A stretch of 64,000 nucleotides of DNA from Macrostomum lignano (GCA_002269645.1 NIVC01000536.1:186001-250000), one strand, 5' to 3'; counted from the first letter of the stretch, positions 3,563 to 32,908 are shown. Made by a program: numbers and translations. The notes: generated from the sequence alone by a model not told the origin.

Positions 3563-3579
3563 TTGAATCGCCCTTACCC

Positions 3580-3603
3580 CGCTCTACCCGGCTGCAACTT
3601 CAG
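3580..3603 (+). promoter_or_regulatory. 3' splice acceptor 8 nt upstream of BUB3 ATG (candidate trans-splice or 5'UTR-intron acceptor)
   Basis: Pyrimidine-rich tract ending cttCAG (AG at 3602-3603), then caaccgca-ATG. Confidence 0.55.
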
Positions 3604-3611
3604 CAACCGCA

Positions 3612-6503
3612 ATGTCATCGGGTGACGGTGGATTGCAAACTGAGGTGCGCCTGAAGGAGCCGCCGGAAGACGGCATCAGCGCGGTGAAATTCCAGCCGAA
3701 CTCTTGTCAGCACCTGCTGGTGTCCAGCTGGGACGGCTCCGTGCGGCTGTACGATGTGAATAAGAATTCACTGCGGTCCACCTACTATCATCAGCAGCCT
3801 GTGTTGGACTGCGACTTCTCTGTGAGATTCTTGTGGTACAAGCGGAGCTCTGAGGGTTGGCCTGGGTTAGGGAAATGTTTATGGATGAGTGCCTGAAGCT
3901 GAATGAGTTTTTAGTCTGAAGTTTAGAAGCTTGAATGTTTATGAGCTAAAAGCCTGAAGGGGAGTTCGTAACCTGAAGCTCCAAAGCTGAAGGCCTAAAG
4001 TTCATTAGGGTTGTAGCCTAAATGTGTACGAGGTACTAGCCTGAAGGCGTACAAGGTACTAGCCTGAAGGTGTACAAGGTAATAGCCTGAAGTGTATAGT
4101 AGTAGTCTGAAGTTCTATAAAGTAGTAGCCGAAGGCGTACAGGGTACTAGCCTGAAGGCGTACAAGGTAGTAGCCTGCAGGTGTATAAGCCTGAAGGGGA
4201 GTTTGTAACCTGAAGCTCCAAAGCGGAAGGCCTAGAGTTCACTAGGGTTGTAGCCAAAATGTGTACGAGGTAGTAGCCTGAAGGCGTACAAAGTACTAGC
4301 CTGAGGGTGTACAAGGTACTAGCCCGAAGGCGTACAAGGTACTAGCCTGAAGGCGTAAAAGGTAGTAGCCTGCAGGTGTACAAGCTAGTAGCCTGAAAGT
4401 CAGTTGTCCCTTATACTTGTTAATTTTTTTAATTGTTATAAATTACGAGTATTATAAATTCATCCTCTCAGGAGGCTGCCAGGTCCTTCAGTGGCGGCTT
4501 GGACTGCGTTCTGCTGGGCTACGACTGGACCGCCGGCAAAGGTTGGTGACGTTGTGAGCTCCTGTCGCTTTAAATTTTATATCAACCATTAGAATCGGCA
4601 TTATATCATCCGTTAGAATAGGTAATATATATCACCTATTAAAATTGTTAATAAATTCGCCATCGAATCGCCCCAAAAATCGGCCTTCAAAACCGCACTC
4701 TCCGATCGCCCCGCAGATATCGTAGTCGGCTATCACGACCGACCAATCAGATGCGTTCACTTCTCCGCGGACACAAATCAGCTGGTGACGGGCTCGTGGG
4801 ACAGCTCCGTAAAGCTTTGGGACACCAGGGCGCCCGCATTCAGCTCCATGCACCAGCAGCCGGACAAGGTTTACACCCTGGACACTGCCGGGCACCATCT
4901 GGTTGTTGGTACGGCTGGCCGGCATGTTCTTGTCTGGGATTTGAGACAGATGACTCAGCCGCAGCAGACCAGAGAGTCCAGCTTGAAATATCAGACCCGC
5001 TGCTTGCGCTGCTTTCCAAATAAACAGGCAAGTGCTGGGGAGGGGACTTTTGGGAAATGCGGCTGGGGAGCTGGGTGAAGGGACAGGGTGCAGGGAGCTG
5101 GGTGAAGAGACAGGGTGCAGGGAGTTGGGTGAAGAGACAGGGTGCAGGGAGCTGGGTGAAGGGACAGGGTGCAGCGAGCTGGGTGAAGGGACAGGGTGCA
5201 GGGAGCTGGGTGAAGGGACAGGGTGCAGGGAGCTGGGTGAAGGGACAGGGTGCAGGGAGCTGGGTGAAGGGACAGGGTGCAGGGAGCTGGGTGAAGGGAC
5301 AGGGTGCAGGGAGCTGGGTGAAGGGACAGGGAGCTGGGTGAAGGGACAGGGAGCTGGGTGAAGAGACAGGGTGCAGGGAGCTGGGTGAAGGGACAGGGTG
5401 CAGGGAGCTGGGTGAAGGGACAGGGTGCAGGGAGCTGGGTGAAGGGACAGGGTGCAGGGAGCTGGGTGAAGGGACAGGGAGCTGGGTGAAGAGACAGGGT
5501 GCAGGGAGCTGAATCAAGGGACAGGGTACAGGGAGCTGGGTGAAAGGACAGGGTGTAGGGAGCTGGGTGAAGAGACAGGGTGCAGGGAGCTGGGTGAAGG
5601 GACAGGGTACAGGGAGCTGAGTGAAGAGACAGTGTGCAGAGAGCTGAACGGACAGGGTGCAGGGAGCTGGGTGAAGGGACAGGGTGCAGGGAGCTGGGTG
5701 AAGGGACAGGGTGCAGGGAGCTGGGTGAAGAGACAGGGTGCAGGCAGCTGGGTGAAGAGACAGCGTGCAGGGATCTGAGTGAAGGGACAGGGTGTAGGGA
5801 GCTGGGTGAAGGGACAGGGTGTAGGGAGCTGGGTGAAGGGACAGGGTGTAGGGAGTTGAGTGAAGGGACAGGGTGTAGGGGCATGTAGGGAGAGAAATAA
5901 GGAAGATTTAGGAACAAGGGTGCAGAGATATGCAGGGAAGTGTAAGCTGAGTATTTATGCTAACTTGTAGTTTAGTTCAGCAAAGGTCGAGTAGGTTAGT
6001 GATTATATCATCCTAGTACTGTAAGTAGGCAGTTTGGAACTCGCAGTTCATGACCTAATCGCCTGGCCTTGCAGGGCTACGTCCTGTCCTCAATCGAGGG
6101 CCGAGTAGCCGTAGAATTTTTCGACACCAATCCGGAAGTTCAAGCGAAAAAGTACGCCTTCAAGTGCCACCGGGTGAAGACCCAGGACGCGGAGGAAATC
6201 CATCCGGTGAACGCTGTGGCTTTTCACCGTCAGTTTAACACGTTCGCGACCGGCGGCAGCGACTGCATGGTTAACATCTGGGACGGCTTCAATCGGAAGC
6301 GGCTGATGCAGCTGCACAAATTTCCAACATCAATTTCGGCGTTGGCATTCGCTGACGACGGCAGCATGCTGGCTGTGGCGGCCTCCTATATGTTTGAGCA
6401 GGGGGAGGAGAGCGCGACTGGCCAGCAGCGGGTTGAAGACAGCGTGTTTATTCGGTACACTAGCGACCAGGAGGTCCGGCCCAAGCATATGCCTCAGCAG
6501 TAG
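3612..6503 (+). CDS. BUB3: Mitotic checkpoint protein BUB3 (WD40), 4 exons, ~339 aa
   Basis: Exons 3612-3821, 4472-4541, 4717-5027, 6075-6503 with consistent phases. Motifs PPEDGISAVKF, LLVSSWD, SGGLD, VTGSWD, RESSLKYQTRC, FPNKQ|GYVLSSIEGRVAVE, KYAFKCHR, TFATGGSD, NIWDGFNRKRL. Intron 3 is GC-AG. Confidence 0.96.
3950..4400. repeat. Degenerate 23-bp repeat (TAGCCTGAAGGCGTACAAGGTAC) within a ~238-bp duplicated block, BUB3 intron 1
   Basis: tagcc period 23 (4037, 4060). Block starting cctgaagggg(g)agtt occurs at ~3953 and ~4190. Confidence 0.8.
5066..5885. repeat. 27-bp G-rich minisatellite (GGGAGCTGGGTGAAGGGACAGGGTGCA), ~30 copies, BUB3 intron 3
   Basis: Direct; 9-aa periodicity of the overlapping spurious ORFs. 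Confidence 0.97.
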
Positions 6504-19500: not shown

Positions 19501-20798
19501 CCTCGCGGACGCTGGCGCGCCGGCCTTTCAGGTGAATTCGCTGGTAGCCGCCCACGAACGCCCCCATGCGGCCGATGTTGAGCAGCAGGTGATCCGCCAC
19601 CCAGCTGGATATTGGGGTGTAAAGGTACTCTTTTTTCCTGTAGGTAGCAGCCTTTGCAATGTGCATTTTTATGCAAAGCTGTGCAAAGCTCCAGCGACCT
19701 CCCCAATGTACACTCCACTCCCGACCAACCCCGCTTCCCCAATGTACATTCCACTCCAAACCAACCCCACCTCCCGAATGTACACTCCACTCCCGACCAA
19801 CCCCACCTCCGCAATGTACACTCCATTCCCGACCAACCCCACCTCCCCAATGTACATTCCACTCCAAACCAACCCCACCTCCCGAATGTACACTCCACTC
19901 CCGACCAACCCCACCTCCGCAATGTACACTCCATTCCCGACCAACCCCACCTCCCCAATGTACATTCCACTCCAAACCAACCCCACCTCCCGAATGTACA
20001 CTCCACTCCCGACCAACCCCACCTCCGCAATGTACACTCCATTCCCGACCAACCCCACCTCCCCAATGTACATTCCACTCCAAACCAACCCCACCTCCCG
20101 AATGTACACTCCACTCCCGACCAACCCCACCTCCCCAATGTACACTCCATTCCCGACCAACCCCACCTCCCCAATGTACATTCCACTCCAAACCAACCCC
20201 ACCTCCCGAATGTACACTCCACTCCCGACCAACCCCACCTCCCCAATGTACACTCCATTCCCGACCAACCCCACCTCCCCAATGTACATTCCACTCCAAA
20301 CCAACCCCACCTCCCGAATGTACACTCCACTCCCGACCAACCCCACCTCCCCAATGTACACTCCACTCCAGACCAACCCCACCTCCTCAATGTACACTCC
20401 ATGTAACAGGTAGGATTTTGTGTCCATCCTGCCTGCACCTTCTGCTCACGTCGGATAACAAAGAATTGAACTCGAAGCACGATTTTTCTGGGCCCAGGCT
20501 GCTGCGGCCACCCCCAAAAACCTCACCTCCGCCAAGGAGACAGAGGCGCGGTGGCTTTGCCCCCAATCTGGGTGACAAAAGACACCAGGAAAGCCAAGGC
20601 CAGCGACAGGATCAGCAGAAGCAGCCGCACGGGGAACAGCAGCAAGCCGAGCAGGGGCACAGTCAGATAGTGGTACCAGAAGAAGCCCGCCCGATGGTAA
20701 AACGGATTGAACGGACGAGGCGGCAGAGGCAGCGAGCAGACGCAGGCGTCAGCCGTGTCTGCCGTGACGGCCGAGTCACCGCTGGACGACGGCTGCCC
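16576..20798 (-). CDS. LPCAT: Lysophosphatidylcholine acyltransferase (LPCAT1/2 family), 9 exons, ~524 aa; no in-frame ATG at its 5' end
   Basis: Exons 20798-20527, 19604-19387 (donor uncertain), 18647-18371 (acceptor uncertain), 18291-18237, 17749-17667, 17517-17190, 17104-17006, 16917-16767, 16664-16576; total 1572 nt, in frame. Motifs NPFYH, TM helix, APHTSLTD (HX4D), LLVFPEGTCTNG, GAFTPGVPVQPV, EFLPVYHPS, LYANNVR, EF-hand-like DWSGSGRID. Confidence 0.9.
17805..18160. repeat. Degenerate ttctcaggtgtgg repeat plus partial duplication of exon 4, LPCAT intron 4
   Basis: Recurring ggttctcaggtgtgg; 17925-18031 duplicates 18165-18270. Confidence 0.7.
18665..19300. repeat. 24-bp minisatellite (GGGGGCTGTAAACTGCCGGCTATT), LPCAT intron 2
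   Basis: Direct; 8-aa periodic spurious ORF LLGAVNCR. Confidence 0.96.
19700..20400. repeat. 35-bp minisatellite (AATGTACACTCCACTCCCGACCAACCCCACCTCCC), ~20 copies, LPCAT intron 1
   Basis: Direct; 105-bp trimer higher-order period. Confidence 0.96.
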
Positions 20799-20934
20799 CT
20801 GAAAGACGGCGGCGGCGGCGTCAACAGAGATTGTTGTGGCTGATGCGAGTAGTCTAGCACGATTATTCTCTAACAAGATTTTAAATCGATTTTGTCTGGT
20901 CCAGTACTGCAGCTTTTTACATTAGAATGAGGGT

Positions 20935-21895
20935 TATTTATGAGTGGAATTTACATTGGGGAGGTGGGGTTGGTAGGGAGTGGAGTGTAAATTGGGGAGG
21001 TGGGTTTGGTCTGGAATGGAGTGTACATTGGGGAGGTGGGGTTGGTCTGGAGTGGAGTGTACATTGGGGAGTAGGGTTGGTCGAGAGTGGAGTGTACATT
21101 GGGGAGGTGAGTTCGTCGGGAGCGAGTGTACATTGGGGGTGGGGTTGGTCGGGAGTGGAGTGTACATTGGGAAGGTGGATTTGGTCTGGAGTGGAGTGTA
21201 CATTGGGGAGTGGGGTTGGTCTGGAGTGGAGTGTACATTGGGGAGTAGGGTTGGTCGGGAGTGGAGTGTACATTGGAGAGGTGGATTTGGTCTGGAGTGG
21301 AGTGTACATTGGAGAGGTGGATTTGGTCTGGAGTGGAGTGTACATTGGAGAGGTGGATTTGGTCTGGAGTGGAGTGTACATTAGGGAGGTGGGGTTGGTC
21401 TGGAGTGGAGTGTACATTGGGGGTGGGGTTGGTCGGGAGTGGAGTGTACATTGGGAAGGTGGATTTGGTCTGGAGTGGAGTGTACATTGGGGAGTGGGGT
21501 TGGTCTGGAGTGGAGTGTACATTGGGGAGTAGGGTTGGTCGGGAGTGGAGTGTACATTAGAGAGGTGGATTTGGTCTGGAGTGGTGTACATTGGAGAGGT
21601 GGATTTGGTCTGGAGTGGAGTGTACATTAGAGAGGTGGATTTGGTCTGGAGTGGAGTGTACATTGGAGAGGTGGATTTGGTCTGGAGTGGAGTGTACATT
21701 AGAGAGGTGGATTTGGTCTGGAGTGGAGTGTACATTGGAGAGGTGGATTTGGTCTGGAGTGGAGTGTACATTAGGGAGGTGGGGTTGGTCGGGAATGGAG
21801 TGTACATTGGGGAGGTGAGTTCGTCGGGAGCGAGTGTACATTGGGGGTGCATGGGGTTGGTCGGGAGTGGAGTGTACGTTGGAGAGGTGGGGTGA
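20935..21895. repeat. Same 35-bp minisatellite in opposite orientation, upstream of LPCAT exon 1
   Basis: gtgtacattggggaggtggggttggtctggagtgga is the reverse complement of the 19700-20400 unit. Confidence 0.95.
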
Positions 21896-22643
21896 TAATT
21901 TCAATTGACTACTAAAGTAATATCTGTAGTCTGAATTTCTGAAACAATCGGTGAAATATGGTAATATTTATCAATCATAAAATGATGTAGCCTTTGGTTA
22001 TAGAGGCTACATTAATATCCGCAGTTATCTTATATATTTGCAAAGAAAACGTCAGCATTGCAAGACGCAATTTTCAGGTTGCATTATTACTGTCGCCTTG
22101 GGATAAAAAAGAAGTGAACAAAAGTTACGCACAGGTAAATTCAGATTAAGTGCCAGCGGAGTGTTTAAGATAGAATAAATTCAGACGAAAGAAAATACAA
22201 AAAGGTTTTTATAAATAAAATTAAGGCATTTGTATCAGCGCTGGATAGCACCACAGATAACATAGAATAATAATATGTAATTGATAGTAAATTATAATAC
22301 ATAATATATCTATATGGGTTTATACATTAGCCGTGATTAAGCTTAAATTTTTGTTTTAACTTGCCAATTCTCAAACAGTCGGGAATTGCTAAACTGAAGT
22401 TCAAATAGAAAAAACAATTTCGGGACACACAAGAGGTCCCGGCCCCCGGGTTCGAACTCAGAAAATTAATTCAGGATTTATTGCATAATAGAAAATCTAC
22501 GCATCAATACATAGAGGTGCTGCATTGCAATCTGGAAAATATATTAAAAAATTACAGGTAAGCACACAAACTGTGCTGCTACTCTACAGTATCTGGCACA
22601 CTTGGCCAGATTACACAATTCTATCTATCCAGTGAGATAGGGC

Positions 22644-23250
22644 CGGATTCTCAGGTGTTGGGGTTCAGGGCCGGATTCTCAGGTGTTGGGGTACAGGGCC
22701 GGATTCTCAGGTGTTGGGGTTCAGGGCCGGATTCTCAGGTGTTGGGGTTCAGGGCCGGATTCTCAGGTGTTGGGGTTCAGGGCCGGATTCTCAGGTGTTG
22801 GGGTTCAGGGCCGGATTCTCAGGTGTTGGGGTTCAGGGCCGGATTCTCAGGTGTTGGGGTTCAGGGCCGGATTCTCAGGTGTTGGGGTTCAGGGCCGGAT
22901 TCTCAGGTGTTGGGGTTCAGGGCCGGATTCTCAGGTGTTGGGGTTCAGGGCCGGATTCTCAGGTGTTGGGGTTCAGGGCCGGATTCTCAGGTGTTGGGGT
23001 TCAGGGCCGGATTCTCAGGTGTTGGGGTTCAGGGCCGGATTCTCAGGTGTTGGGGTTCAGGGCCGGATTCTCAGGTGTTGGGGTTCAGGGCCGGATTCTC
23101 AGGTGTTGGGGTTCAGGGTCATAATTCTCAGGTGCTAGGGTTCAGGTTTTAGTTCAGGGTCGGATTCCTCAGGTGCTAAGGTTCAGGTTTTAGTTCAGGG
23201 TCGGATTCCTCAGGTGCAAGGGTTCAGGTTTTAGTTCAGGTTCGGATTCT
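22644..23250. repeat. 28-bp minisatellite (GGCCGGATTCTCAGGTGTTGGGGTTCAG), ~17 near-perfect copies plus a degenerate tail
   Basis: Direct; 28-aa periodic spurious ORFs. Confidence 0.96.
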
Positions 23251-23355
23251 CTCGTTTCAGTTTTTCAGCTTTGATACGCGGAACAAGTGTCAGACGATGT
23301 TAACTCAATAAAAATTCAAATATTCAAACAAATATCAGTGCAACTGTCCCAGAGC

Positions 23356-26045
23356 TCAGACCAGGTACACAGTATCTATGCAGGAGAAGCCCGTGGCAAC
23401 TCCGCCCTCGTCCGTGAACGCTGATTTCGTTCTCAACACGTGACCAGCCGAGCAGTTCAATCGCTCAGAGTTGTTCTTAGCCACCAGAGCGCCGTAGATG
23501 CCCAGCTCGGAGATCGCAGACACGCACAGCGGCATCTCCGGCCGGCGGGACAGCCGCTGATCGGCTTTGAGCATCAGCGACACCTGCTGCTGAGGCCGGA
23601 TGCGCCGCATCAGGATGTACGCGGCCGACTGTCGGGTTGTCAGGCGGCTGGCGAAGTCCACCACGTCGCGGCCGTAGATATTGTTGCCGCCGCCTTCTCG
23701 CTGCGGCTTCAGTACGAAGTCTTCGGGGTCGGCCAGCAGCCAGCGGTGCGCTCTGCGGGCATCGAATGAAATGTATGCTGTGCGGAGGAATATGCAGCAG
23801 AATTAGCTGCAGCTCAAACTGAAACTGAAACCGAAACGATAAACCAAATTAAAATCAAAGATAGAAACGAAACCGAAACCGAAACTGAAACTAAACCCGA
23901 AACCGAAACTGAAACTAAACCCGAAACCGAAACTGAGACTAAACCCGAAACTAAAACCAAACCCGAAACTAAAACCAAACCCGAAACCGAAACTGAAACT
24001 ACATGTAAACCGGAAACCGAAACTAAAACTAAATCTGAAACCCGAAACTGAAACTAACCCCGAAATCGAAACTGAAACTAAACCCAAAACTGAAACTGAA
24101 AAATAACACGATATACCAAAATAAACTCAAAACTCAAAATAAACCAAAAACCGAAACCGAAGCTAAATTCAAAACCTGAAAACTAAATTAAAAACCTGAA
24201 AACTAAACCCAAAACCTAAAAACTAAACCTAAAACCTGAGCTCACCTCGAGTCGCTCAGCACGCATTGATCAACAAACGTGGCCTCAACTTTGGCGCTCT
24301 TCCCCGGCAGATAGCGCGCCACGGCGCCGGGTTCGCAGAGCGCCGCCTGTACAGCCTTGGTGTTGGCCAGCATGTAGGCCAGGCTCGGACACTTGATGGC
24401 CCGCGATCGCTCCATCAGCAGCTTGGCGCTCCAGGCCACGCCGGCCGGGTCGGAGAAGTGATCGGGCGAGTAGCCGTGCCGGTAGTACACAATGGCCACC
24501 TCCTGGTCAGCCAGGTACAGCCGGCCGGAGCTCTCCTCCAGTCGGGCCGAGCTGGCAATCTGGTCGAAGCTCCGACGCAGAATCTGCGGCACGTGAACTG
24601 GCGAATCTGACGACGCGTCGGCAGCATAGATTTCGGCTTCCAGTGTTCGCTGGTCGAAAATATTTCGCTCGTCTGGCGACACCACAAACAGGATGGCGGC
24701 TTCCGGCCGGCCGTACAGCTTGAAGGCCTGGATGAAGGCTTCGCCGAAGGTCTCGGCTGGCCGGTTGTCGGGCAGCCGGTGGGCCAGCTGGCGCTCGCTG
24801 ACACCGGCGGCCGACATCACCTGGCGGTGCACAGTCGACAGGCGCTGGGCCAGGCCGCCGAAGCTGGACGCCATCAGGTTGATTTCCACCTGCGATTGTT
24901 TGGGAAGGAGAGATGCCAGATCGCTATTGATTTCTCCATTGCTTCCAAATTCAAAATCTCACCCTGCAGACTTTCTGAGATTCAAAATCTCACCTTTAAG
25001 AGATATTTGGAGCTTCAAAGTCTGACCTTGAAGATTTTCTGGGCTTCAAAGTCTGACCTTGAAGATTTTCTGGGCTTCAAAGTCTGACCTTGAAGATTTT
25101 CTGGGCTTCAAAGTCTGACCTTGAAGATTTTCTGGGCTTCAAAGTCTGACCTTGAAGATTTTCTGGGCTTCAAAGTCTGACCTTGAAGATTTTCTGGGCT
25201 TCAAAGTCTGACCTTGAAGATTTTCTGGGCTTCAAAGTCTGACCTTGAAGATTTCTGGGCTTCAAAGTCTGACCTTGAAGATTTTCTGGGCTTCAAAGTC
25301 TGACCTTGAAGATTTTCTGGGCTTCAAAGTCTGACCTTGAAGATTTTCTGGGCTTCAAAGTCTGACCTTGAAGATTTTCTGGGCTTCAAAGTCTGACCTT
25401 GAAGATTTTCTAGGCTTCAAATTTTCACTTTAAAGATTCTCTTAGCTTAAAAATCTCACCCTGAAGATTTTTAGAGCTTTAAAATATTTTCCTGGAGCCA
25501 CCAGAAAATGCCACGATGGGTAAAAACTGCAGAGTTACATTATCCCAAATATTTTAATTCCTACAGACTTTGTATGCCAATGCAACCCCCAACCCCCTCA
25601 ACCACCCTCGCACCTGTTTAAGCCCGGCCTCTTCATCCAGCATATAGTCGGCTCGATTCAAAGCCAAAGTGATTGGCTGGTCAGCGCCAGACTGCCGGAC
25701 AGTTTGGTACATGTCCCACAGGGCGGACAGGAACGAGTCCGACTCGGCCGCAGGTGGGATCACCCGGCACAGGAAATTGTGATCCCGGGACACCCGGTGG
25801 TACAGCGAGTTGAACAGGGCCTGCAGCTCAACTGCTTGGTTGAACGCCTCCTTGGAGAAGGAGGACGGCACCAGGGTGATTGGCGCCATCATGCAGCGGT
25901 CGGGGGCGGCGGAACCAGACGAGGAAGATGCCGGGTTGTCTTTTAGTAGCAGGCCGTTCATGCAGGCCAGGTCTCTGGCCAGGCTGGACAGGCGGACCTG
26001 CTGGCTTCCCGTCAGCCCGCTAGAAGGGTTGCGCCTGTGCTGCTG
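23356..26045 (-). CDS. GSS: Glutathione synthetase (eukaryotic type), 3 exons, ~491 aa; conserved frame begins upstream of the first ATG (25961)
   Basis: Exons 26045-25614, 24889-24246, 23752-23356, phase-consistent. Motifs APITLVPS, LNRADYM, KQ|VEINLMASSFGGL, EERNIFDQ-like DERNIFDQ, VYYRHGY, ERSRAIKCP, LANTKAVQ, FVLKPQREGGGNN, SELGIYG, EGGVATG. Confidence 0.95.
23815..24240. repeat. A-rich 6/24-bp repeat (AAACTGAAACTAAACCCGAAACCG), GSS intron 2
   Basis: Direct. Confidence 0.85.
25010..25425. repeat. 31-bp minisatellite (CAAAGTCTGACCTTGAAGATTTTCTGGGCTT), ~13 copies, GSS intron 1
   Basis: tctgacc at 25021 and 25052. Confidence 0.96.
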
Positions 26046-26134
26046 CTGCGGGCGGGCGAACGAGTTTTAGTTGCTATGGAGACGGCTGGGATGGCAAGGC
26101 GGGTAGGGTAGCGACCATAGAATTCTTGGGAGAG

Positions 26135-26655
26135 TGAGAAGACAGAGTGACAGTGACGGGAAGAGGAGAGTGACGGACAGATTGACTGTAAGGAGAGTGA
26201 CGAACAGAGTGACAGAAGAGAGTGAAAGTGACAGGAAGAGGAGAGTGACGGACAGATTGACAGAAACAGGGGAGTGACAGGAAGACAGGAAGAGGAGAGT
26301 GACGGACAGAGTGACAGGAAGAGGAGAGTAACGGACAGAGTGACAGGAAGAGGAGAGTGACGGACAGAGTGACAGGAAGAGGAGAGTAACGGACAGAGTG
26401 ACAGGAAGAGGAGAGTGACGGACAGAGTGACAGAAAGGAGAGTAACGGACAGAGTGACAGGAAGAGGAGAGTGACGGACAGAGTGACAGAAAGGAGAGTA
26501 ACGGACAGAGTGACAGGAAGAGGAGAGTGACGAACAAAGTGACAGGAAGAGGAGAGTGACGGACAGAGTGACAGGAAGAGGAGAGTGACAGGAGGAGGAG
26601 AGTGACAGGAAGGAGAGTGACGAACAAAGTGACAGAAAGAGGAGGGTGACAAGAA
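26135..26655. repeat. 29-bp purine-rich minisatellite (GACAGGAAGAGGAGAGTGACGGACAGAGT) upstream of GSS
   Basis: gacagg at 26342 and 26371. Confidence 0.92.
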
Positions 26656-27009
26656 GCATTAACAGTCACTATATTTAAATTGGTCAAGCCAAACTAACAT
26701 AATCAAGGACAAAGAAATTAATTCTAGACAGAATGTTTGTATTTTTGGGGTTGCACGCAAAATAGTCTTTGTCAGTATATTTCTAGTTACCAGACTGAGC
26801 CTCGGACAAAGGAAAATGCAACCGGATATTTCTGTCAACATTACGTAATAAATACGCGAGAGTCAATTATGAATTATGACAGTGCGGATTTCATACGCAT
26901 TATAAAATGTACAAGTTTTCACTAGCAAAATGCTGCGTTTACGAGTGAATGAAAGGCCAACAAGCTGGGTTGCAACAGCATGAGTGTAATATAATATAAG
27001 CCGTCAGAA

Positions 27010-27320
27010 ATCCCTAGCTATTCTAGCCAATTAGAAAACGCCTCGCTTTTCTAGCCGATTAGAGAACGTCTAACTTGTCTAGCCAATGAGAGGACATCTA
27101 GCTTTTCTAGCCAATCAGATAACTCCTAGCTTTTCTAGCCAATTAGAGAATGCCTCGCTTTTCTAGCCAATGAGAGGATATCTAGCTTTTATAGCCAATT
27201 AGAGAACTCCTAGCTTTTGTAGCCAATCAGAGGACGCTTAGCTTTTCTAGCCAATTAGAGAACGTCTGACTTTTCTAGCCAATTACAGAACGCTTGACGC
27301 TAAGCTGCTCCAGCCAATCA
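27010..27320. repeat. Degenerate ~28-29-bp repeat with CTAGCCAAT(T/C)AG, ~10 copies, between ABT1 and GSS
   Basis: Recurring ttttctagccaattagagaac. Confidence 0.8.
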
Positions 27321-27335
27321 AAGACCAGCAAAATA

Positions 27336-28287
27336 TCAAGATTTCCCTCGCCCACCTCCTAGCAGTTGTGCCAAAAATGTAGGATTATTAACGGCCTGCA
27401 ACTCGGGATCGTTGTTGCCCTTGCGGCTCCGCCGTTCGCGTCGACGCCGCTGTTCAACCCGCTGCAACTCCGGCAAAGGTCGAAACTGATCGCCCTTGGC
27501 TTGCTTAGCTCGCTCCTGATATTTCGACTGCTCCAAGGATTCCTTGTAGAGCTTGCCGATCCGTCTAGCTTGCTGAATCTCCATTGCCAGGCGCTTATTT
27601 CTAACGGCTTTCTCGTTGGCCTCTCTATAGGTGATGTCGGTCCAGGCAAAGCCGGGCAGGTAGCGCAGATTCCACAGCTGGCCAGCCCACGGCTTTTTCT
27701 TGTCGGCTACTTCGGTGGCGTTCAAGGAGGCGACGCAACGCTTTGCGTCCGATCGGCGAAGGAATTCGGCCCAGCCTTCGCTGTACAGCCGCCAGCGCTT
27801 GCGGGCCGATGCTTCGTCGACCTTTGCGTGGTAAAAATGCAGGGAAAGTAGTGCTGATTTTAAAAAGCAATCCAGCCAATAAGAAAAAAAATAACAAAAT
27901 CCAGCCCAATGAGTACACAGCAAGCAAAATCCAGCCCAATGAGTACACAGCAAGCAAAATTCAGCCAATCAGAATACAGTAAGCAATTAGATTACAGTAG
28001 CATTCGAACCAATCAGATTTGAGAAGCATTTCAACCAATCAGAGCAGAGTACTAAAAAGGCAGCTTTAAAAACTAACCTGCAAAAAAACTCGCCCTAACT
28101 TTCCATATGGCGAGAGGTGCTCCCGAACCAGCTTCACCGTCATACCGTGCGGTACACTGCTCAGATACACAATTCCAGGCTTTAGCGACTTCCCAGTTGA
28201 GGATTTGGGGAGTTCCTCCTTGAGCTCCTCTTCCATAGGCTCGGCTGCTTCGTCTGCTGACATGCCGCTTTGGGGATTAGTGGCCAT
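27336..28287 (-). CDS. ABT1: Activator of basal transcription 1 / pre-rRNA processing factor ESF2, 2 exons, ~231 aa
   Basis: Exons 28287-28078 and 27821-27336. Motifs PGIVYLSSVP, LSPYGKLGRVFLQ, YSEGWAEF, WNLRYLPGFAW, RLAMEIQQA. Confidence 0.94.
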
Positions 28288-28329
28288 AAATTGGGATCCA
28301 GAGTTGCTAAGCTGCTTCCAAATATTAGT

Positions 28330-28530
28330 TTGTTGGGATTCTTTGTGGGCGGTTTTGGATAATTTGGAGATTCCTGGATTCCTGAATAGTTTTGGGATTT
28401 CTGGATGGTTTTGGGATTTCTGGATGGTTTTGGGATTCCTGGATAGTCTGGGAATTTGGTTTTGGGATGTCTGGGTGTTTTTGGGATTTCTGAATAATTT
28501 AGGAATTTCTGGATGGTTTTGGCATTTCTA
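28330..28530. repeat. Degenerate ~19-20-bp repeat (ttttgggatttctggatgg) between DDX51 and ABT1
   Basis: Direct. Confidence 0.7.
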
Positions 28531-28730
28531 ATTGGTTTTGCGATTAATGAGTAAAAGAGTAAAAAAGTCGAGCCATTTCTCACAGTACAGCCAAAAAATG
28601 CATATGAAAATTGTTGGCTAGGCTGACAATTTCAGTTATATAATTAGTTAAAGTGAAATGCCTCACAGGGGGGACCAGATAATTATATTCCAGCAGTTTC
28701 CTTCCAAATGGAAGATCAAAAAACAAAGAA

Positions 28731-31700
28731 TCAATGGTCAACTTCTTTTGATTTGTCTTCTTTTGTCTTTCTCTTTTTCATGCTGGTTTTCTTATTCTGA
28801 TCTTTCGACGGATCTTCGCTCGCCGCCTCGCCCGCCTTCTGCTCCTCGTGCAGCCGGTTCAGGGCAGTCTGGTACCTGGCCTCGTACCGCTTAGTCTTGC
28901 TGCCGTGCAGCCGAACCTCTCGTACTTGACGCCCGCCAGCGCTCAGCATCCGGCGGAAGTGCAGAACCTCGCGCCGCTCCAGCAGGGTGTACGCGGCTCC
29001 AGCTCGGCCGGCTCGCGCAGTGCGGCCGGCGCGGTGCACGTAGGTTCGGAGCGAGGCCGGCCGGTCGTAGCACACGACGGCATCTACGCTGGGCAGGTCC
29101 ATGCCGCGGGCCATGCTGTCCGAGCAGACCAGTACGGACAGTTGGCCGGTGGAGAAACGGCGCAGGATGCGGGCTCGCTTGGGCACCTGCGGATTGGGGG
29201 AGGGAGATGGGTAAAAACTATAAAAAATCCCACTTAAGCAAAACATTACAAATTCTTGTCAACATGAGATTCCCAAAACCCGAAATCCTTAAACTCAAAA
29301 TCCAAAAAATTGATCTGAATCCCCAAAACTTGACTCAAATTTAAAAACTCTATCGAAGGGAGTTTCGAAGGGATTCGAAGATTTCGAAGGGATTTCGATT
29401 GATTTTAGGGATTTCGGTCGAGTTTTTGGGATTTCGATCGAGTTTTGGGGATTTCAATCGAGTTTCAGGATTTCAATCGAGTTTTGAGGATTTCAATCAA
29501 GTTTCGAGTTTTAGTTTTGAAATCCTTAAAACTCGATTGAAATCCCGAAACTCGTTTGAAATCCCAAAACTCGTTTGAGATCCCAAAAACTCAATTAAAA
29601 TCCTAAAAACACGATTTCAGTTTTCAATTATCATCAATTATCCAATTATTAAAATTATTGGGATCAATTAAAATCCCAAAATCCTTAAAACTCGATTGAA
29701 ATCCTGAAACTCGATTGAAATCCCAAAAACTCGATTGAAATCCCGAAACTCGTTTGAGATCCCAAAAACTCAATTAAAATCCCGAAAACACGATTTCAAT
29801 TTTCAATTATCAATTATTAAATTATTCAATTCAATTATCAATTATCGATTAACCAATTATTATAATTATTGAGATCATAAATCCCAAAAATCCTTAAAAC
29901 TCGATTGAAATCCCGAAAACTCGATTGAAATCCTCAAAACTCGATTGAAATCCTCAAAACTCGATTGAAATCCTCAAAACTCGATTGAAAGCCCAAAACT
30001 CGATCGAAATTCCAAAAGCTCGATTGAAATCCCAAAAATCAATTGATATCCAAAAAACCGATTGAAGTCCAAAAACTTAATCGAAATCCCAAAAATCGAC
30101 TGAAATCCCAAAAAAACCGATCGAAGTCCCAAACACTCAAAATGCCTCAAGCCCGTAAAAGCGCGGAAGCAGGAAAATCCAGGAACATCAGCAGCACTGC
30201 TAGCAGTACTCACAGGCAGCCTGGCAGACACGGCCTCGCAGGTGACTCGCGGATCGGCAAAATGTGTAATTAGCGAGGCCAGACGGTGCGCCGACTCGCG
30301 CGAGTTCGTGAAGCAAAGCACCCGGCTGCGGCCGAGGCCCAGCACCAGGTGGATGACAAACAGCGGCTTCTGAGACGGCTTGAGCTGCACGAAGAACTCG
30401 CTCAGACGGCCGGGCGCGGCGGACACCTCCAGCTCCTTGTCGGACTCCGCCGTGGCAGTCAGCAGCAGCGGATTGTGCAGCCGGAATCGCTGGAGCAGCT
30501 CCGGGTTGTGGGTGAGGGTGGCGCTCAGCAGCAGCTTCTGAAGGTGCGGCGGCTTCGAGTGCAGCCACGAGTGGATGCTGGGGTGCGGCATCGGCCTGCT
30601 CAGATAAGGAGGATTTGTAAGCTGACATGATTTATCCCGATGATCTATTTTTTGCCCGCGTGTCAAAATGTCTGTATTCAGCCAGCATTTTTAGTAAAAA
30701 GAAAACCAATTTTAAAATCCCCATTCCAGATTCATTTGCCTAGTCCCAGTTCCTGGCAATTCCTAGTCCCAGATCCCGACAATTCCTAGTCCCAGCTCCC
30801 ATGAATTCCTAGTCCCAAATCTCATGGATCCCTAGTGACCTAGTCGTCCCATATACCGGGAATTTATAGTCCCAGATCCCATGGATTCCTAGTCCCAGAT
30901 CCCAGGGAATCCTAATCCCAGATCCCAGGGGATTCTTAGTCTCAGATTCCAAAAACTCCTAGTCCCAGATCCCAGGAATTCTTAGTATCAGATCCCTGGG
31001 ATTCCTAGGCCCAGATCCCAGAAATTCTTAGCCCCAAATACATCACGATTCACTTCTCTATCCATGATCCCAAGCACCAAAGTACAATATCCATCCCAAA
31101 TCCCCATCATGGATTCCCAGTCTTCGAGTGTAAACCCATCCCTACCCAGAGTCTAACACAGAGAAATAGAAACCCACACACAAACTCAAACAGCATGCCA
31201 GTCCCAGATCATCACAAAGCTAATTAACATCTCCAAACCCCAGGCCTCACCTGTCCAGCAGCCGTTCCAGCAGTCCGAACCAATCCTGCTTCTGTTCGGC
31301 CATGACCCGATCTGCCTCATCAATGATAAGCATGCGCAGCCTAGCCAGACTCAATCCCGGACAGTTGAGCAGGTGATCGGCCAGACGGCCGGGCGTGCAA
31401 ATGACCAGGTCGGCCAGAGGGCGGTAGCTGCCATCCGGCATGAGGCGGACCAGCTGGTGCCGCTCCTTCTCCAGGCTGCGCTCGCCAACCAGCAGCTGGC
31501 AGCGAATCTGGCGGCGACAACCGTCCGAGTCGGCTGCTCCCTCGGACAGAGCGGCCAGCAGCCGGAGGCAAACCTGGTGCACCTGACAGCCAGGGTTAGG
31601 AAATTGAATGATTGGGATTTTAGCTGGGGGATCACGAGATTGGGACTCTAGCTGGGGGATCAGCAGAATGGGATTCTAGCTTGGGGATCAGCAGATTGGG

Positions 31701-32587
31701 ATGTTAGCTGGGGATCAGGAGATTGGGATTCTAGCAGGGGGATCAGCAGATTGGGATGTTAGCTGGGGATCAGGAGATTGGGATTCTAGCAGGGGGATCA
31801 GCAGATTGGGATTTTAGCTGGGGGATCAGGAGATTGGGATTTTAGCTGGGGGATCAGGAGAATGGGATTTCAGCTGGGGGATCAGAATTTTGGGATTTAG
31901 CTAAAGGATCATGAGATTTGTAATTAAGCTATAAGATCCAGGATATTGGTATTGTAGCTAGGAGCTTCCAATTGCGGTTTTGGCTAGATAGAGGAGCCAA
32001 CAAATTGGGATTTTAGCGGGGAACCGTTAGCTAGATTGTTTACATGGCTTACGGTAAAGATCGGAGTTCGGTAACAAATATGGGAGAAACAGTTGCTATA
32101 GTAGTGACAAGCCCCCATGGCATCAAAAGGATTTCTATAAATAAAAAGCCGGCAAACACACCTGCATAGCCAGGTCCCGCACGGGCAGCACAATGATGCA
32201 CCTTAGAGCCACAGTTTTGCAGGCAGCCAGCAGTTGCAGAGCCGGCAGCAGGTAGGCCAGAGTCTTGCCGCTGCCCGTAGCCGCGCACACGGCGAAGTCC
32301 CTCGGCCGAGTCCAGCTGTACCGATGGGACGCCAGCACCAGGGGCACGGAGGTGGCCTGCACAGGGAACAGGGTCTCCACACCGGTGGATCTGAGCGCTG
32401 AACGAATTGGCTCGCTCAGGCAGTCAATGGAATCAATTGGTACGGAAGCATCTAAGCTGTTGTCAATAGCAACCGGCCGGCGCATCCATTCGGGCCGGTA
32501 GGCGCTGCCGGCCGAGCCGACGCCGAGGGGCGCGCGGCGCCGCTTTCGTGTTCGATCGGGAACGAGAGTGAAGCCGCCAACTGACGC
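28731..32587 (-). CDS. DDX51: DEAD-box RNA helicase DDX51/Dbp6, 4 exons; 5' end uncertain (first ATG 32485, open frame to 32695)
   Basis: Exons (32587 or 32485)-32162, 31582-31251, 30595-30214, 29186-28731. Q-motif LFPVQ, AATGSGKT, LPVRDLAMQ, TPGRLADH, DEAD, SATL, LCFTNSRE, SDSMARGMD, HRAGRTARAG. PEW and QKLLLSATL are typical of the Dbp6 subfamily. Confidence 0.93.
29290..30130. repeat. Degenerate ~20-bp repeat (aatcccaaaaactcgattga) with an internally inverted segment, DDX51 intron 3
   Basis: gatttcaatcgagtttt units at 29380-29510, then aaaactcgattgaaatc units from ~29520. Confidence 0.82.
30740..31030. repeat. Degenerate ~21-bp repeat (attcctagtcccagatccc), DDX51 intron 2
   Basis: Direct. 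Confidence 0.78.
31610..31920. repeat. ~29-bp repeat (gggattttagctgggggatcagcagatt), DDX51 intron 1
   Basis: Direct. Confidence 0.82.
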
Positions 32588-32908
32588 CTGTTGGGCTTCC
32601 CCGTTGTCAAGGCCGTCAGCTGACGGCTTCGCCTCGTCAATTGAGGCTTCGGGGGAAGCGTTGGGTTCGTCAATTTCCAGGAAAATTGTACCAGATCAAT
32701 TTATTGCCTTTTATTTGCTAAAATGCATTCTCTACTTCTAGTAGCATCTTGCAGTTTGCAGAAAGAATATGCAGACATAAAAATATTTAGAGAATTAGGG
32801 TCGGAATTTTTTTTGACAAAATTGAACAATGTAAAGATCAAAAGGTAAAACATGACAGAATAGATGCAAATTTTTGTAACCAGCAAAGTAACAAAATAAC
32901 AAGCCCTA

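What the first reader, a model, noticed from the sequence alone, without database searches (positions are those of the whole stretch)
25961..26069. GSS conserved N-terminal helix lies upstream of its first ATG; tandem in-frame CAG acceptors fit an SL-AUG start
Seen: the first ATG (25961) falls inside LSSLARDLAC-M-NGLL, which by eye matches the first helix of eukaryotic GSS (human LEELARQAVDRALAEGVLL). There is an in-frame TAA at 26067-26069 and no ATG in between. After a pyrimidine-rich tract come CAG CAG CAG (26048-26040); all three acceptors are phase 0, so any of them keeps the frame. Inference: a second gene in the same cluster depends on an externally spliced AUG, with NAGNAG micro-heterogeneity (M-QQH, M-QH or M-H).
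Basis: partly seen in the sequence, partly recalled or inferred. Interest (0 to 1): 0.7.

Follow-up and report, generated by a model that had tools for sequence, protein, structure and literature searches.

The report
Flatworm GSS gene needing spliced-leader AUG
The window comes from the flatworm Macrostomum lignano, and its glutathione synthetase gene has no start codon of its own ahead of a conserved first helix, so the AUG almost certainly comes from the trans-spliced leader, a trick already known in flatworms.

Summary
On the minus strand an in-frame TAA (26069-26067) is followed by 35 sense codons with no ATG until 25961. CAGCAGCAG (26048-26040) lies in phase 0. The window is identical to Macrostomum lignano scaffold NIVC01000536.1. 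The 28 genome-encoded codons upstream of ATG 25961 encode the whole first helix of glutathione synthetase, including an Asp (25973-25971) that is invariant in 106/106 orthologues and aligns with human Asp24, a dimer-interface residue. Orthologues have a median of 28 residues before this point; this protein would have 29 with one added Met. The published M. lignano spliced leader ends in ATG. Two independent public annotations treat the CDS as 5'-incomplete, and the UniProt model begins at QQH, exactly after the first CAG. No upstream cis exon is annotated. Use of the flatworm SL 3'-AUG as initiator has been known since Cheng et al. 2006. I could not see SL reads, so trans-splicing at this gene is inferred. 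NAGNAG heterogeneity is untested, and "all three in phase" follows trivially from a trinucleotide repeat. The next gene downstream (LPCAT-like) shows the same pattern even more clearly. Verdict: a real but ordinary new instance of a known mechanism.

The parts
26167..26650 (-). 29-nt-unit tandem array, 82% pyrimidine on the sense strand, forming the distal part of the presumed outron
   Evidence: TRF; composition and AG count
26049..26166 (-). Proximal outron. It holds four out-of-frame AGs (26187-86 just beyond its upper edge, 26126-25, 26087-86, 26075-74) and the in-frame TAA
26067..26069 (-). In-frame TAA that closes the GSS reading frame upstream
26040..26048 (-). CAGCAGCAG: three tandem candidate trans-splice acceptors, all phase 0 (junctions 26046|26045, 26043|26042, 26040|26039)
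   Evidence: The UniProt model A0A1I8HJY0 starts at QQH, which is base 26045. The sequence is identical in three paralogous copies
26035..26036 (-). Competing out-of-frame AG (CACAG|G). An SL-AUG joined here would read MAQPF-stop
25962..26045 (-). 28 genome-encoded codons (QQHRRNPSSGLTGSQQVRLSSLARDLAC) upstream of the first genomic ATG; coding by homology
25959..26009 (-). Codons of predicted helix alpha-1 (residues 14-30 when the SL Met is counted as residue 1)
   Evidence: AlphaFold2 model: helix 13-29 in P0001 numbering, pLDDT about 95. The model matches human GSS 2HGS with TM 0.87/0.90
25971..25973 (-). GAC, Asp26, aligned with human GSS Asp24 (dimer interface); Asp in 106/106 orthologues
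   Evidence: bioRxiv 10.64898/2026.06.09.730884
25959..25961 (-). First genomic in-frame ATG (Met30), an internal helix position where orthologues have L (73) or M (15)
25614..26045 (-). GSS coding exon 1 (144 codons); donor GT at 25613-25612
   Evidence: the spliced model equals P0123, 490 aa
24246..24889 (-). GSS exon 2
23356..23752 (-). GSS exon 3, including the stop TGA at 23358-23356

Best explanation
[quoted passage not shown] It lies in a same-strand gene cluster: DDX51-like helicase, ESF2/ABT1-like, GSS, then an LPCAT-like acyltransferase. The pre-mRNA upstream of GSS is an outron made largely of a pyrimidine-rich tandem array. This outron is removed by spliced-leader trans-splicing. 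The 35-nt SL (CGGTCTCTTACTGCGAAGACTCAATTTATTGCATG) is joined to the CAG acceptor at 26046|26045, possibly also at 26043|26042 or 26040|26039. The last three bases of the SL then become the first AUG of the mRNA, in frame with the body of the gene. Translation gives M-QQHRRNPSSGLTG (disordered), then helix alpha-1 (SQQVRLSSLARDLACM), then the rest of a normal 491-residue ATP-grasp GSS. What is shown: the sequence anatomy, the species, homology of the upstream codons, the predicted helix, and the SL sequence (from the literature). What is inferred: SL addition at this particular acceptor, and initiation at the SL AUG.
For: The species and locus are fixed: the window is identical to NIVC01000536.1, and the spliced model equals UniProt A0A1I8HJY0. 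The SL ends in ATG, about 30% of genes are trans-spliced, and the acceptor motif ends in CAG (PMC8629364). A G3 2023 paper states that the Macrostomum SL likely contains the translation start ATG (PMC10468722). Conserved residues, including the invariant Asp, lie upstream of the first genomic ATG. All 106 orthologues have at least 19 (median 28) residues before the Met30 column, against 29 here with the SL Met. AlphaFold2 places a confident 17-residue helix entirely upstream of and ending at Met30. Human Asp24 contacts are reported as essential for activity and stability. An in-frame TAA 6 codons upstream of the CAGs excludes a longer exon ORF. All three acceptors are in frame. The UniProt model starts exactly after CAG number 1, and the GenBank models are flagged 'partial' with no upstream exon. 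All three paralogous copies lack an ATG in the same way. The neighbouring LPCAT-like CDS in GenBank starts exactly after TTTCAG| and has no Met anywhere in its first exon, so the same solution is used next door. The repeat-adjusted distance from the ESF2 stop is about 525 nt, below the published 1-kb operon threshold. Precedent: in S. mansoni more than 40 cDNAs need the SL AUG (PMC9851317), and E. granulosus shows the same (PMC3510090).
Against: No SL-containing read or cDNA for this gene could be retrieved. The GenBank models start 15-18 nt downstream of the CAGs at positions not preceded by AG, so they do not mark the acceptor. They look like slightly 5'-truncated StringTie models, as the ESF2 model also is. 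The sequence before the first CAG (CCCGCAG) does not match the T at -5 of the published [T/C]TNCAG motif. Four AGs lie upstream of the CAGs and one lies 5 nt downstream, all out of frame, and sequence alone cannot rank them. The SL AUG has U at -3, a weak context, so some scanning through to Met30 is possible.
Confidence: 0.85

Rival explanations
1. Translation starts at the genomic ATG 25961 (Met30) and gives a functional enzyme shortened by 29 residues. The open frame upstream would then be untranslated leader.
For: ATG 25961 is the first genomic in-frame ATG. It carries the same TGCATG context as the SL AUG, and the weak -3 U of the SL AUG would allow leaky scanning. Splicing at the out-of-frame CACAG|G would give a 5-codon uORF followed by re-initiation at Met30.
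Against: This start would delete the whole helix alpha-1 (pLDDT about 95), including an Asp invariant in 106/106 orthologues and equivalent to human Asp24. No orthologue has fewer than 19 residues before this column. The upstream frame carries the conserved motif in the right register, which is unexpected for a UTR. It may still exist as a minor isoform.
Confidence: 0.05
2. An unannotated cis exon further upstream supplies the ATG and is spliced to one of the CAG acceptors. One candidate is the micro-exon ending ...TCTATG|GTCGCT at 26118-26116, which would give a 70-nt intron.
For: Introns of this gene are also filled with tandem arrays like the upstream region. An ATG directly followed by GT exists at 26118-26113.
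Against: Two independent RNA-supported annotations show no upstream exon and mark the CDS as 5'-incomplete. The N-terminal length already equals that of orthologues with a single added Met. The candidate donor GTCGC matches none of the +3 to +5 positions of the published GT[G/A]AG consensus. The other upstream ATGs open only short ORFs.
Confidence: 0.04
3. The mRNA is not trans-spliced, and translation starts at a near-cognate codon, for example the in-frame CTG at Leu12 (26015-26013).
For: In-frame CTG codons exist at residues 12, 20, 23 and 27. The GenBank transcript models begin near 26030, upstream of these codons.
Against: The species has a dedicated SL that ends in AUG, and in-frame acceptors lie exactly where the orthologue N-terminus would begin. 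The GenBank 5' ends look truncated, since the ESF2 model loses its own ATG. The UniProt model reaches the first CAG.
Confidence: 0.03

Closest known systems
[quoted passage not shown]
   Same: The SL ends in AUG. The acceptor phase puts that AUG in frame. The conserved N-terminus of the protein lies upstream of the first genomic AUG, so the SL Met is needed to match orthologues. This is the same criterion used in PMC3510090 and summarised in PMC9851317.
   Different: The host is Macrostomum lignano, an early-branching free-living rhabditophoran rather than a neodermatan parasite. No cDNA or translation assay is available for this gene. I found no genome-wide count of SL-AUG-dependent ORFs for M. 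lignano in the papers held.
Eukaryotic glutathione synthetase (human GSS, PDB 2HGS; Pfam PF03917 and PF03199)
   Same: Identity is 37-41% over the full length. The model superposes on 2HGS at TM 0.87/0.90. The invariant GSS motifs are present (KPQREGGGNN and others). The N-terminal helix with Asp26, equivalent to human Asp24, is present.
   Different: The start codon is not in the gene. There is a small insertion at residues 40-50 (poly-Ser, lower pLDDT).
NAGNAG tandem acceptors (subtle alternative splicing that adds or removes one codon)
   Same: CAGCAGCAG offers three acceptors 3 nt apart. Each would change the product by one Gln in a disordered, unconserved N-terminal tail.
   Different: Here the donor would be a trans-spliced SL, not a cis exon. 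Use of more than one site is not shown. The repeat may simply be a short poly-Gln/CAG microsatellite.
M. lignano SL-resolved operons (Ustyantsev and Berezikov 2021; Wudarski et al. 2017 transcriptional units)
   Same: Four same-strand genes lie in a row. The repeat-adjusted spacers are about 0.5-1 kb and are filled with tandem repeats, as those authors describe. The downstream gene's annotated 5' end falls exactly on a TTTCAG acceptor.
   Different: Co-transcription of this particular cluster was not seen directly here.

Membership tests
SL-AUG-initiated flatworm mRNA | The organism's spliced leader ends in AUG | tested here: met
   The species was identified as M. lignano. The published SL is CGGTCTCTTACTGCGAAGACTCAATTTATTGCATG (PMC8629364). 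No SL RNA gene lies in the window, so this rests on the literature.
SL-AUG-initiated flatworm mRNA | The mRNA is SL trans-spliced at an acceptor just upstream of the coding body | not testable with these tools
   The evidence is only indirect. The UniProt model starts at base 26045, right after CAG number 1. The GenBank CDS is 'partial'. No upstream exon is annotated. No reads or cDNAs were retrievable.
SL-AUG-initiated flatworm mRNA | The acceptor phase places the SL AUG in frame with the main ORF | tested here: met
   Junctions at 26046, 26043 and 26040 all give a continuous ORF into GSS.
SL-AUG-initiated flatworm mRNA | No genomic in-frame AUG precedes the conserved N-terminus; the SL Met is needed to match orthologues | tested here: met
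   TAA at 26069-26067 and no ATG until 25961. Conserved L20, A24, R25, D26 and A28 lie upstream. The N-terminal length is 29 against an orthologue median of 28.
SL-AUG-initiated flatworm mRNA | Ribosomes initiate at the SL AUG in vivo | not testable with these tools
   This needs ribosome profiling, N-terminal proteomics or a reporter assay.
Eukaryotic glutathione synthetase (ATP-grasp) | Full-length sequence and fold match, with both Pfam GSS domains | tested here: met
   PF03199 and PF03917 are on the identical protein. phmmer against 2HGS gives E = 1e-82. Foldseek TM is 0.87/0.90.
NAGNAG alternative acceptor | Tandem NAG motifs 3 nt apart at one acceptor | tested here: met
   CAGCAGCAG at 26048-26040.
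NAGNAG alternative acceptor | More than one of the AGs is actually used | not testable with these tools
   Only the QQH model start is available. Exact look-ups of MQQH, MQH and MH full-length products found none.
M. lignano operon (published criterion) | Adjacent same-strand trans-spliced genes with a repeat-adjusted spacer under 1 kb | tested here: inconclusive
   From the ESF2 stop (27336) to the acceptor (26046) is about 1290 nt, minus 765 nt of tandem arrays, leaving about 525 nt. From the GSS stop to the LPCAT-like acceptor is about 2557 nt, minus 1563 nt, leaving about 994 nt. The trans-splicing status of each gene was not observed directly.

The most novel reading that the evidence does not exclude
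Acceptor choice at this cluster of AGs acts as a translational switch. Splicing the SL to one of the in-frame CAGs would make full-length, dimer-competent GSS. Splicing 5 nt downstream at the out-of-frame CACAG|G (26036-26035), or leaky scanning past the weak-context SL AUG, would yield a 5-codon uORF or a Met30-initiated enzyme lacking the interface helix. Glutathione synthesis would then be tuned at the trans-splicing or initiation step. More broadly, obligate SL-AUG dependence may be widespread in M. lignano: two adjacent genes here show it. That would place the mechanism at the base of Rhabditophora and explain many '5'-partial' models in the public annotation.
Probability: 0.1. Interest if true: 0.5.

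Novelty: new member of a known kind. Interest (0 to 1): 0.25.

Why it matters
The main value is for annotation. M. lignano GSS, and the neighbouring LPCAT-like gene, are deposited as 5'-partial or Met-less proteins, although the mature mRNA most likely encodes a complete protein once the SL AUG is counted. The same is probably true of many trans-spliced genes in this model flatworm. It also extends gene-level evidence for SL-AUG initiation from parasitic flatworms to an early-branching free-living lineage that has transgenesis, where the mechanism could be tested directly. It does not reveal a new mechanism.

Tried and rejected
- **RNA-derived protein fragments carrying the SL junction.** Two protein searches with N-terminal queries returned nothing useful: one search had no hits, and one search gave only a distant EukProt GSS. 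The word index did not even recover the identical UniProt entry, so these negatives carry little weight.
- **Exact look-ups.** Searches for full-length MQQH, MQH and MH products (both alleles) and for a Met30-start product found none in the collection.
- **Supplementary tables.** I searched two M. lignano papers for the gene ids Mlig002428 and Mlig005657. Nothing relevant was held.
- **SL RNA gene in the window.** None was found (up to 3 mismatches), and Rfam gave no hit at gathering threshold.
- **Paralogue comparison.** I compared L001, L002 and L003 to look for a drop in conservation at the acceptor. The copies are about 97-100% identical near the gene, so this was uninformative.
- **AG depletion in the upstream array.** I considered whether the pyrimidine array is depleted in AG beyond its composition. 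It is not: 4 AGs observed against about 6 expected.
- **GenBank CDS starts as acceptors.** Positions 26030 and 26027 are not preceded by AG, and the ESF2 model on paralogous scaffolds is likewise clipped two codons past its own ATG. I rejected these as acceptor evidence.
- **Papers not held.** Wasik 2015, De Jesus 2014 and Polekhina 1999 could not be read. Their content is cited only through papers that quote them.

Full report
**What is in the sequence**

The feature lies on the minus strand. Reading 5' to 3', the sequence is a pyrimidine-rich stretch, then ...AGC AAC TAA AAC TCG TTC GCC CGC CCG CAG CAG CAG CAC AGG CGC AAC CCT ... GCC TGC ATG AAC GGC. The TAA is at 26069-26067. The three CAGs are at 26048-26040. 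The first in-frame ATG is at 25961-25959. The 35 codons between TAA and ATG contain neither a stop nor an ATG.

**What gene and organism this is**

The frame continues through three exons:
- Exon 1: 26045-25614
- Exon 2: 24889-24246
- Exon 3: 23752-23356

The introns have GT..AG boundaries and are filled with tandem repeats.

The spliced product hits one protein at 100% identity: glutathione synthetase of Macrostomum lignano. All other GSS hits are at about 35-41% identity. The 90%-identity cluster holds four public entries:
- UniProt A0A1I8HJY0: identical to the window, 490 aa, begins QQHRRNPSS with no Met.
- UniProt A0A1I8H5Z9: one V/A difference, also begins QQH.
- GenBank PAA81357.1: flagged "partial", begins NPSSG.
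- GenBank PAA86750.1 (with the identical PAA86812.1): flagged "partial", begins PSSG.

The genomic locus of PAA81357.1 (NIVC01000536.1, assembly Mlig_3_7) is base-for-base the window. Two paralogous scaffolds carry the same gene with an identical acceptor region, and neither has an ATG there.

**Are the codons upstream of ATG 25961 really coding?**

- *Alignment to solved structures.* phmmer against PDB sequences starts the alignment to human GSS (2HGS) at query residue 15, matched to human residue 12. That is 15 residues upstream of Met30, counting an added Met as residue 1.
- *Orthologue conservation.* In an alignment with 106 full-length orthologues, five columns upstream of the ATG are conserved and matched by the window: L20 (L in 86/106), A24 (99/106), R25 (K/R in 100/106), D26 (Asp in 106/106) and A28 (104/106). 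At the column of Met30 itself, orthologues carry Leu or Met as an internal residue.
- *N-terminal length.* Every orthologue has at least 19 residues N-terminal to that column, with a median of 28. The window protein would have 29 with exactly one added Met.
- *Chance.* A PSSM from orthologue representatives scores the upstream peptide at z about 3 (44 of 20,000 shuffles reach it). The two other frames score like background. The helix segment alone is matched or beaten by 60 of 60,638 stop-free genomic 16-mers. The motif LxxxA[KR]DxA occurs once in the six-frame translation of the 64-kb window, at this spot and in register.
- *Structure.* An AlphaFold2 model of the public protein (mean pLDDT 91.5) gives a disordered tail of about 12 residues. 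It then gives a confident 17-residue helix that ends exactly at Met30. The model superposes on human GSS at TM 0.87/0.90.
- *Function of the conserved Asp.* Asp26 (25973-25971) aligns with human Asp24. A 2026 preprint, citing De Jesus et al. 2014, describes the contacts of Asp24 with Ser42 and Arg221 across the dimer interface as essential for activity and stability. It also names residues 11-30 as an interface region.

A protein starting at ATG 25961 would lack all of this.

**Where the AUG comes from**

M. lignano has a single 35-nt spliced leader, CGGTCTCTTACTGCGAAGACTCAATTTATTGCATG. It is added to about 30% of genes, and the acceptor motif is [T/C]TNCAG (PMC8629364). [quoted passage not shown]

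Joining the SL to any of the three CAGs puts that ATG in frame, giving M-QQH, M-QH or M-H.

All other AGs in or near the outron are out of frame and would make short uORFs:
- Four lie upstream of the CAGs: 26187-86, 26126-25, 26087-86 and 26075-74.
- One lies just downstream at 26036-35 (CACAG|G), which would read MAQPF-stop.

Two further in-frame AGs at 26002-01 and 25999-98 have a poor pyrimidine tract.

The UniProt models begin at the first complete codon after CAG number 1. That is what a transcript-supported model looks like when the SL part does not align to the genome. An ab initio longest-ORF model would instead have started at NSFARP, right after the TAA.

The GenBank models begin 15-18 nt further in, at positions not preceded by AG. 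I read these as slightly 5'-truncated StringTie models, for two reasons. The published pipeline mapped reads end-to-end (PMC5730564), so SL-bearing reads drop out. The ESF2 model on the paralogous scaffolds is likewise clipped two codons past its own genomic ATG. Neither annotation contains an upstream exon.

**Context**

GSS sits in a same-strand run of four genes:
- a DDX51-like DEAD-box helicase
- an ESF2/ABT1-like gene
- GSS
- an LPCAT-like acyltransferase

The spacer from the ESF2 stop to the GSS acceptor is about 1290 nt. Of this, 765 nt is tandem array, leaving about 525 nt. That is below the 1-kb repeat-adjusted threshold those authors use for operons.

The downstream acyltransferase is the more striking case. 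Its GenBank CDS on this scaffold begins exactly after TTTCAG| (AG at 20800-20799). The product starts GQPSSS, and the whole first coding exon contains no Met. Because the published pipeline cuts transcriptional units at mapped SL peaks, that boundary is most simply an experimentally mapped trans-splice site whose SL AUG is in frame. The same solution is therefore used by two neighbouring genes.

**Comparison with what is known**

Flatworm SLs characteristically end in AUG. Cheng et al. (2006) showed that this AUG can serve as initiator. As summarised in PMC9851317, it is in frame in 28% of S. mansoni trans-spliced transcripts, and more than 40 cDNAs need it. [quoted passage not shown] The AUG is conserved across parasitic flatworm SLs (PMC12582326).

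The present case meets the sequence-level criteria of that class. It fails none that I could test. SL addition and initiation themselves were not testable here.

**Rival explanations**

- *Initiation only at Met30* would delete a conserved, structured, interface-forming helix. It may occur as a minor product, because the SL AUG has a weak -3 U.
- *An upstream cis exon* has no support from either annotation and is unnecessary given the N-terminal length. The one ATG|GT candidate (26118) has a donor matching none of the consensus positions.
- *Non-AUG initiation* on an unspliced leader cannot be excluded, but it is unparsimonious in a species with an AUG-ending SL.

**NAGNAG**

The three acceptors being in phase is automatic for a CAG repeat. 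Whether more than one is used is unknown. Any variation would fall in a disordered, unconserved tail and would probably be neutral.

**Verdict**

The main interpretation is well supported but indirect (confidence about 0.85), and the heterogeneity claim is untested. This is a new, unremarked instance of a mechanism known for two decades. Its value lies mainly in annotation and as a convenient test case in a transgenic flatworm model. Interest is low to moderate.

Noticed in passing
window 20526-20921 (minus strand); acceptor AG at 20800-20799: The LPCAT-like acyltransferase downstream of GSS has no ATG anywhere in its first coding exon. Its GenBank CDS starts exactly after TTTCAG| (GQPSSSGDS...), which matches the published trans-acceptor motif, so an SL AUG would be in frame. 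The paralogous scaffolds carry shorter models that start at internal ATGs.
   Followed up: partly
window 28287-28316 (minus strand): The ESF2/ABT1-like gene has its own ATG at 28287. Two AGs 24-27 nt upstream (28316-15 and 28313-12) are in frame with no stop, so an SL AUG there would add 9-10 residues. The gene is not annotated on this scaffold in GenBank, although it is on both paralogous scaffolds, where the models are clipped two codons past the ATG.
   Followed up: partly
window 32485-32698 (minus strand): The first exon of the DDX51-like helicase is open for 70 codons upstream of its first ATG (32485), back to a TGA at 32698. It has four in-frame AGs (32634-33, 32628-27, 32589-88, 32544-43). 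Its true start is unresolved and could also depend on the SL.
   Followed up: no
window 20000-32000, e.g. 24950-25471, 23864-24239, 22639-23249, 29353-30138: Almost every intron and spacer of the cluster is occupied by tandem arrays of 20-40-nt units, each array different. Exons are about 60% GC against about 40% for the rest.
   Followed up: no
window 26167-26650 (minus strand): A 484-nt, 29-nt-unit array that is 82% pyrimidine on the sense strand lies directly upstream of the GSS acceptors. Its AG count is not lower than its composition predicts.
   Followed up: yes
window 25959-25964: The internal ATG has the hexamer context TGCATG, identical to the last six bases of the spliced leader. This is probably coincidence.
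   Followed up: no
L002 (NIVC01000266.1), about 0.5-1.5 kb upstream of GSS: One of the three paralogous copies diverges completely from the other two beyond about 500-1000 nt upstream of the acceptor, and its ESF2-GSS spacer is longer. The proximal outron and acceptors are conserved.
   Followed up: no
window 3567-6500 (plus strand): A BUB3-like WD40 gene with its own ATG (…AMSSGDGGLQTEVRL…) lies on the opposite strand, outside the cluster.
   Followed up: no
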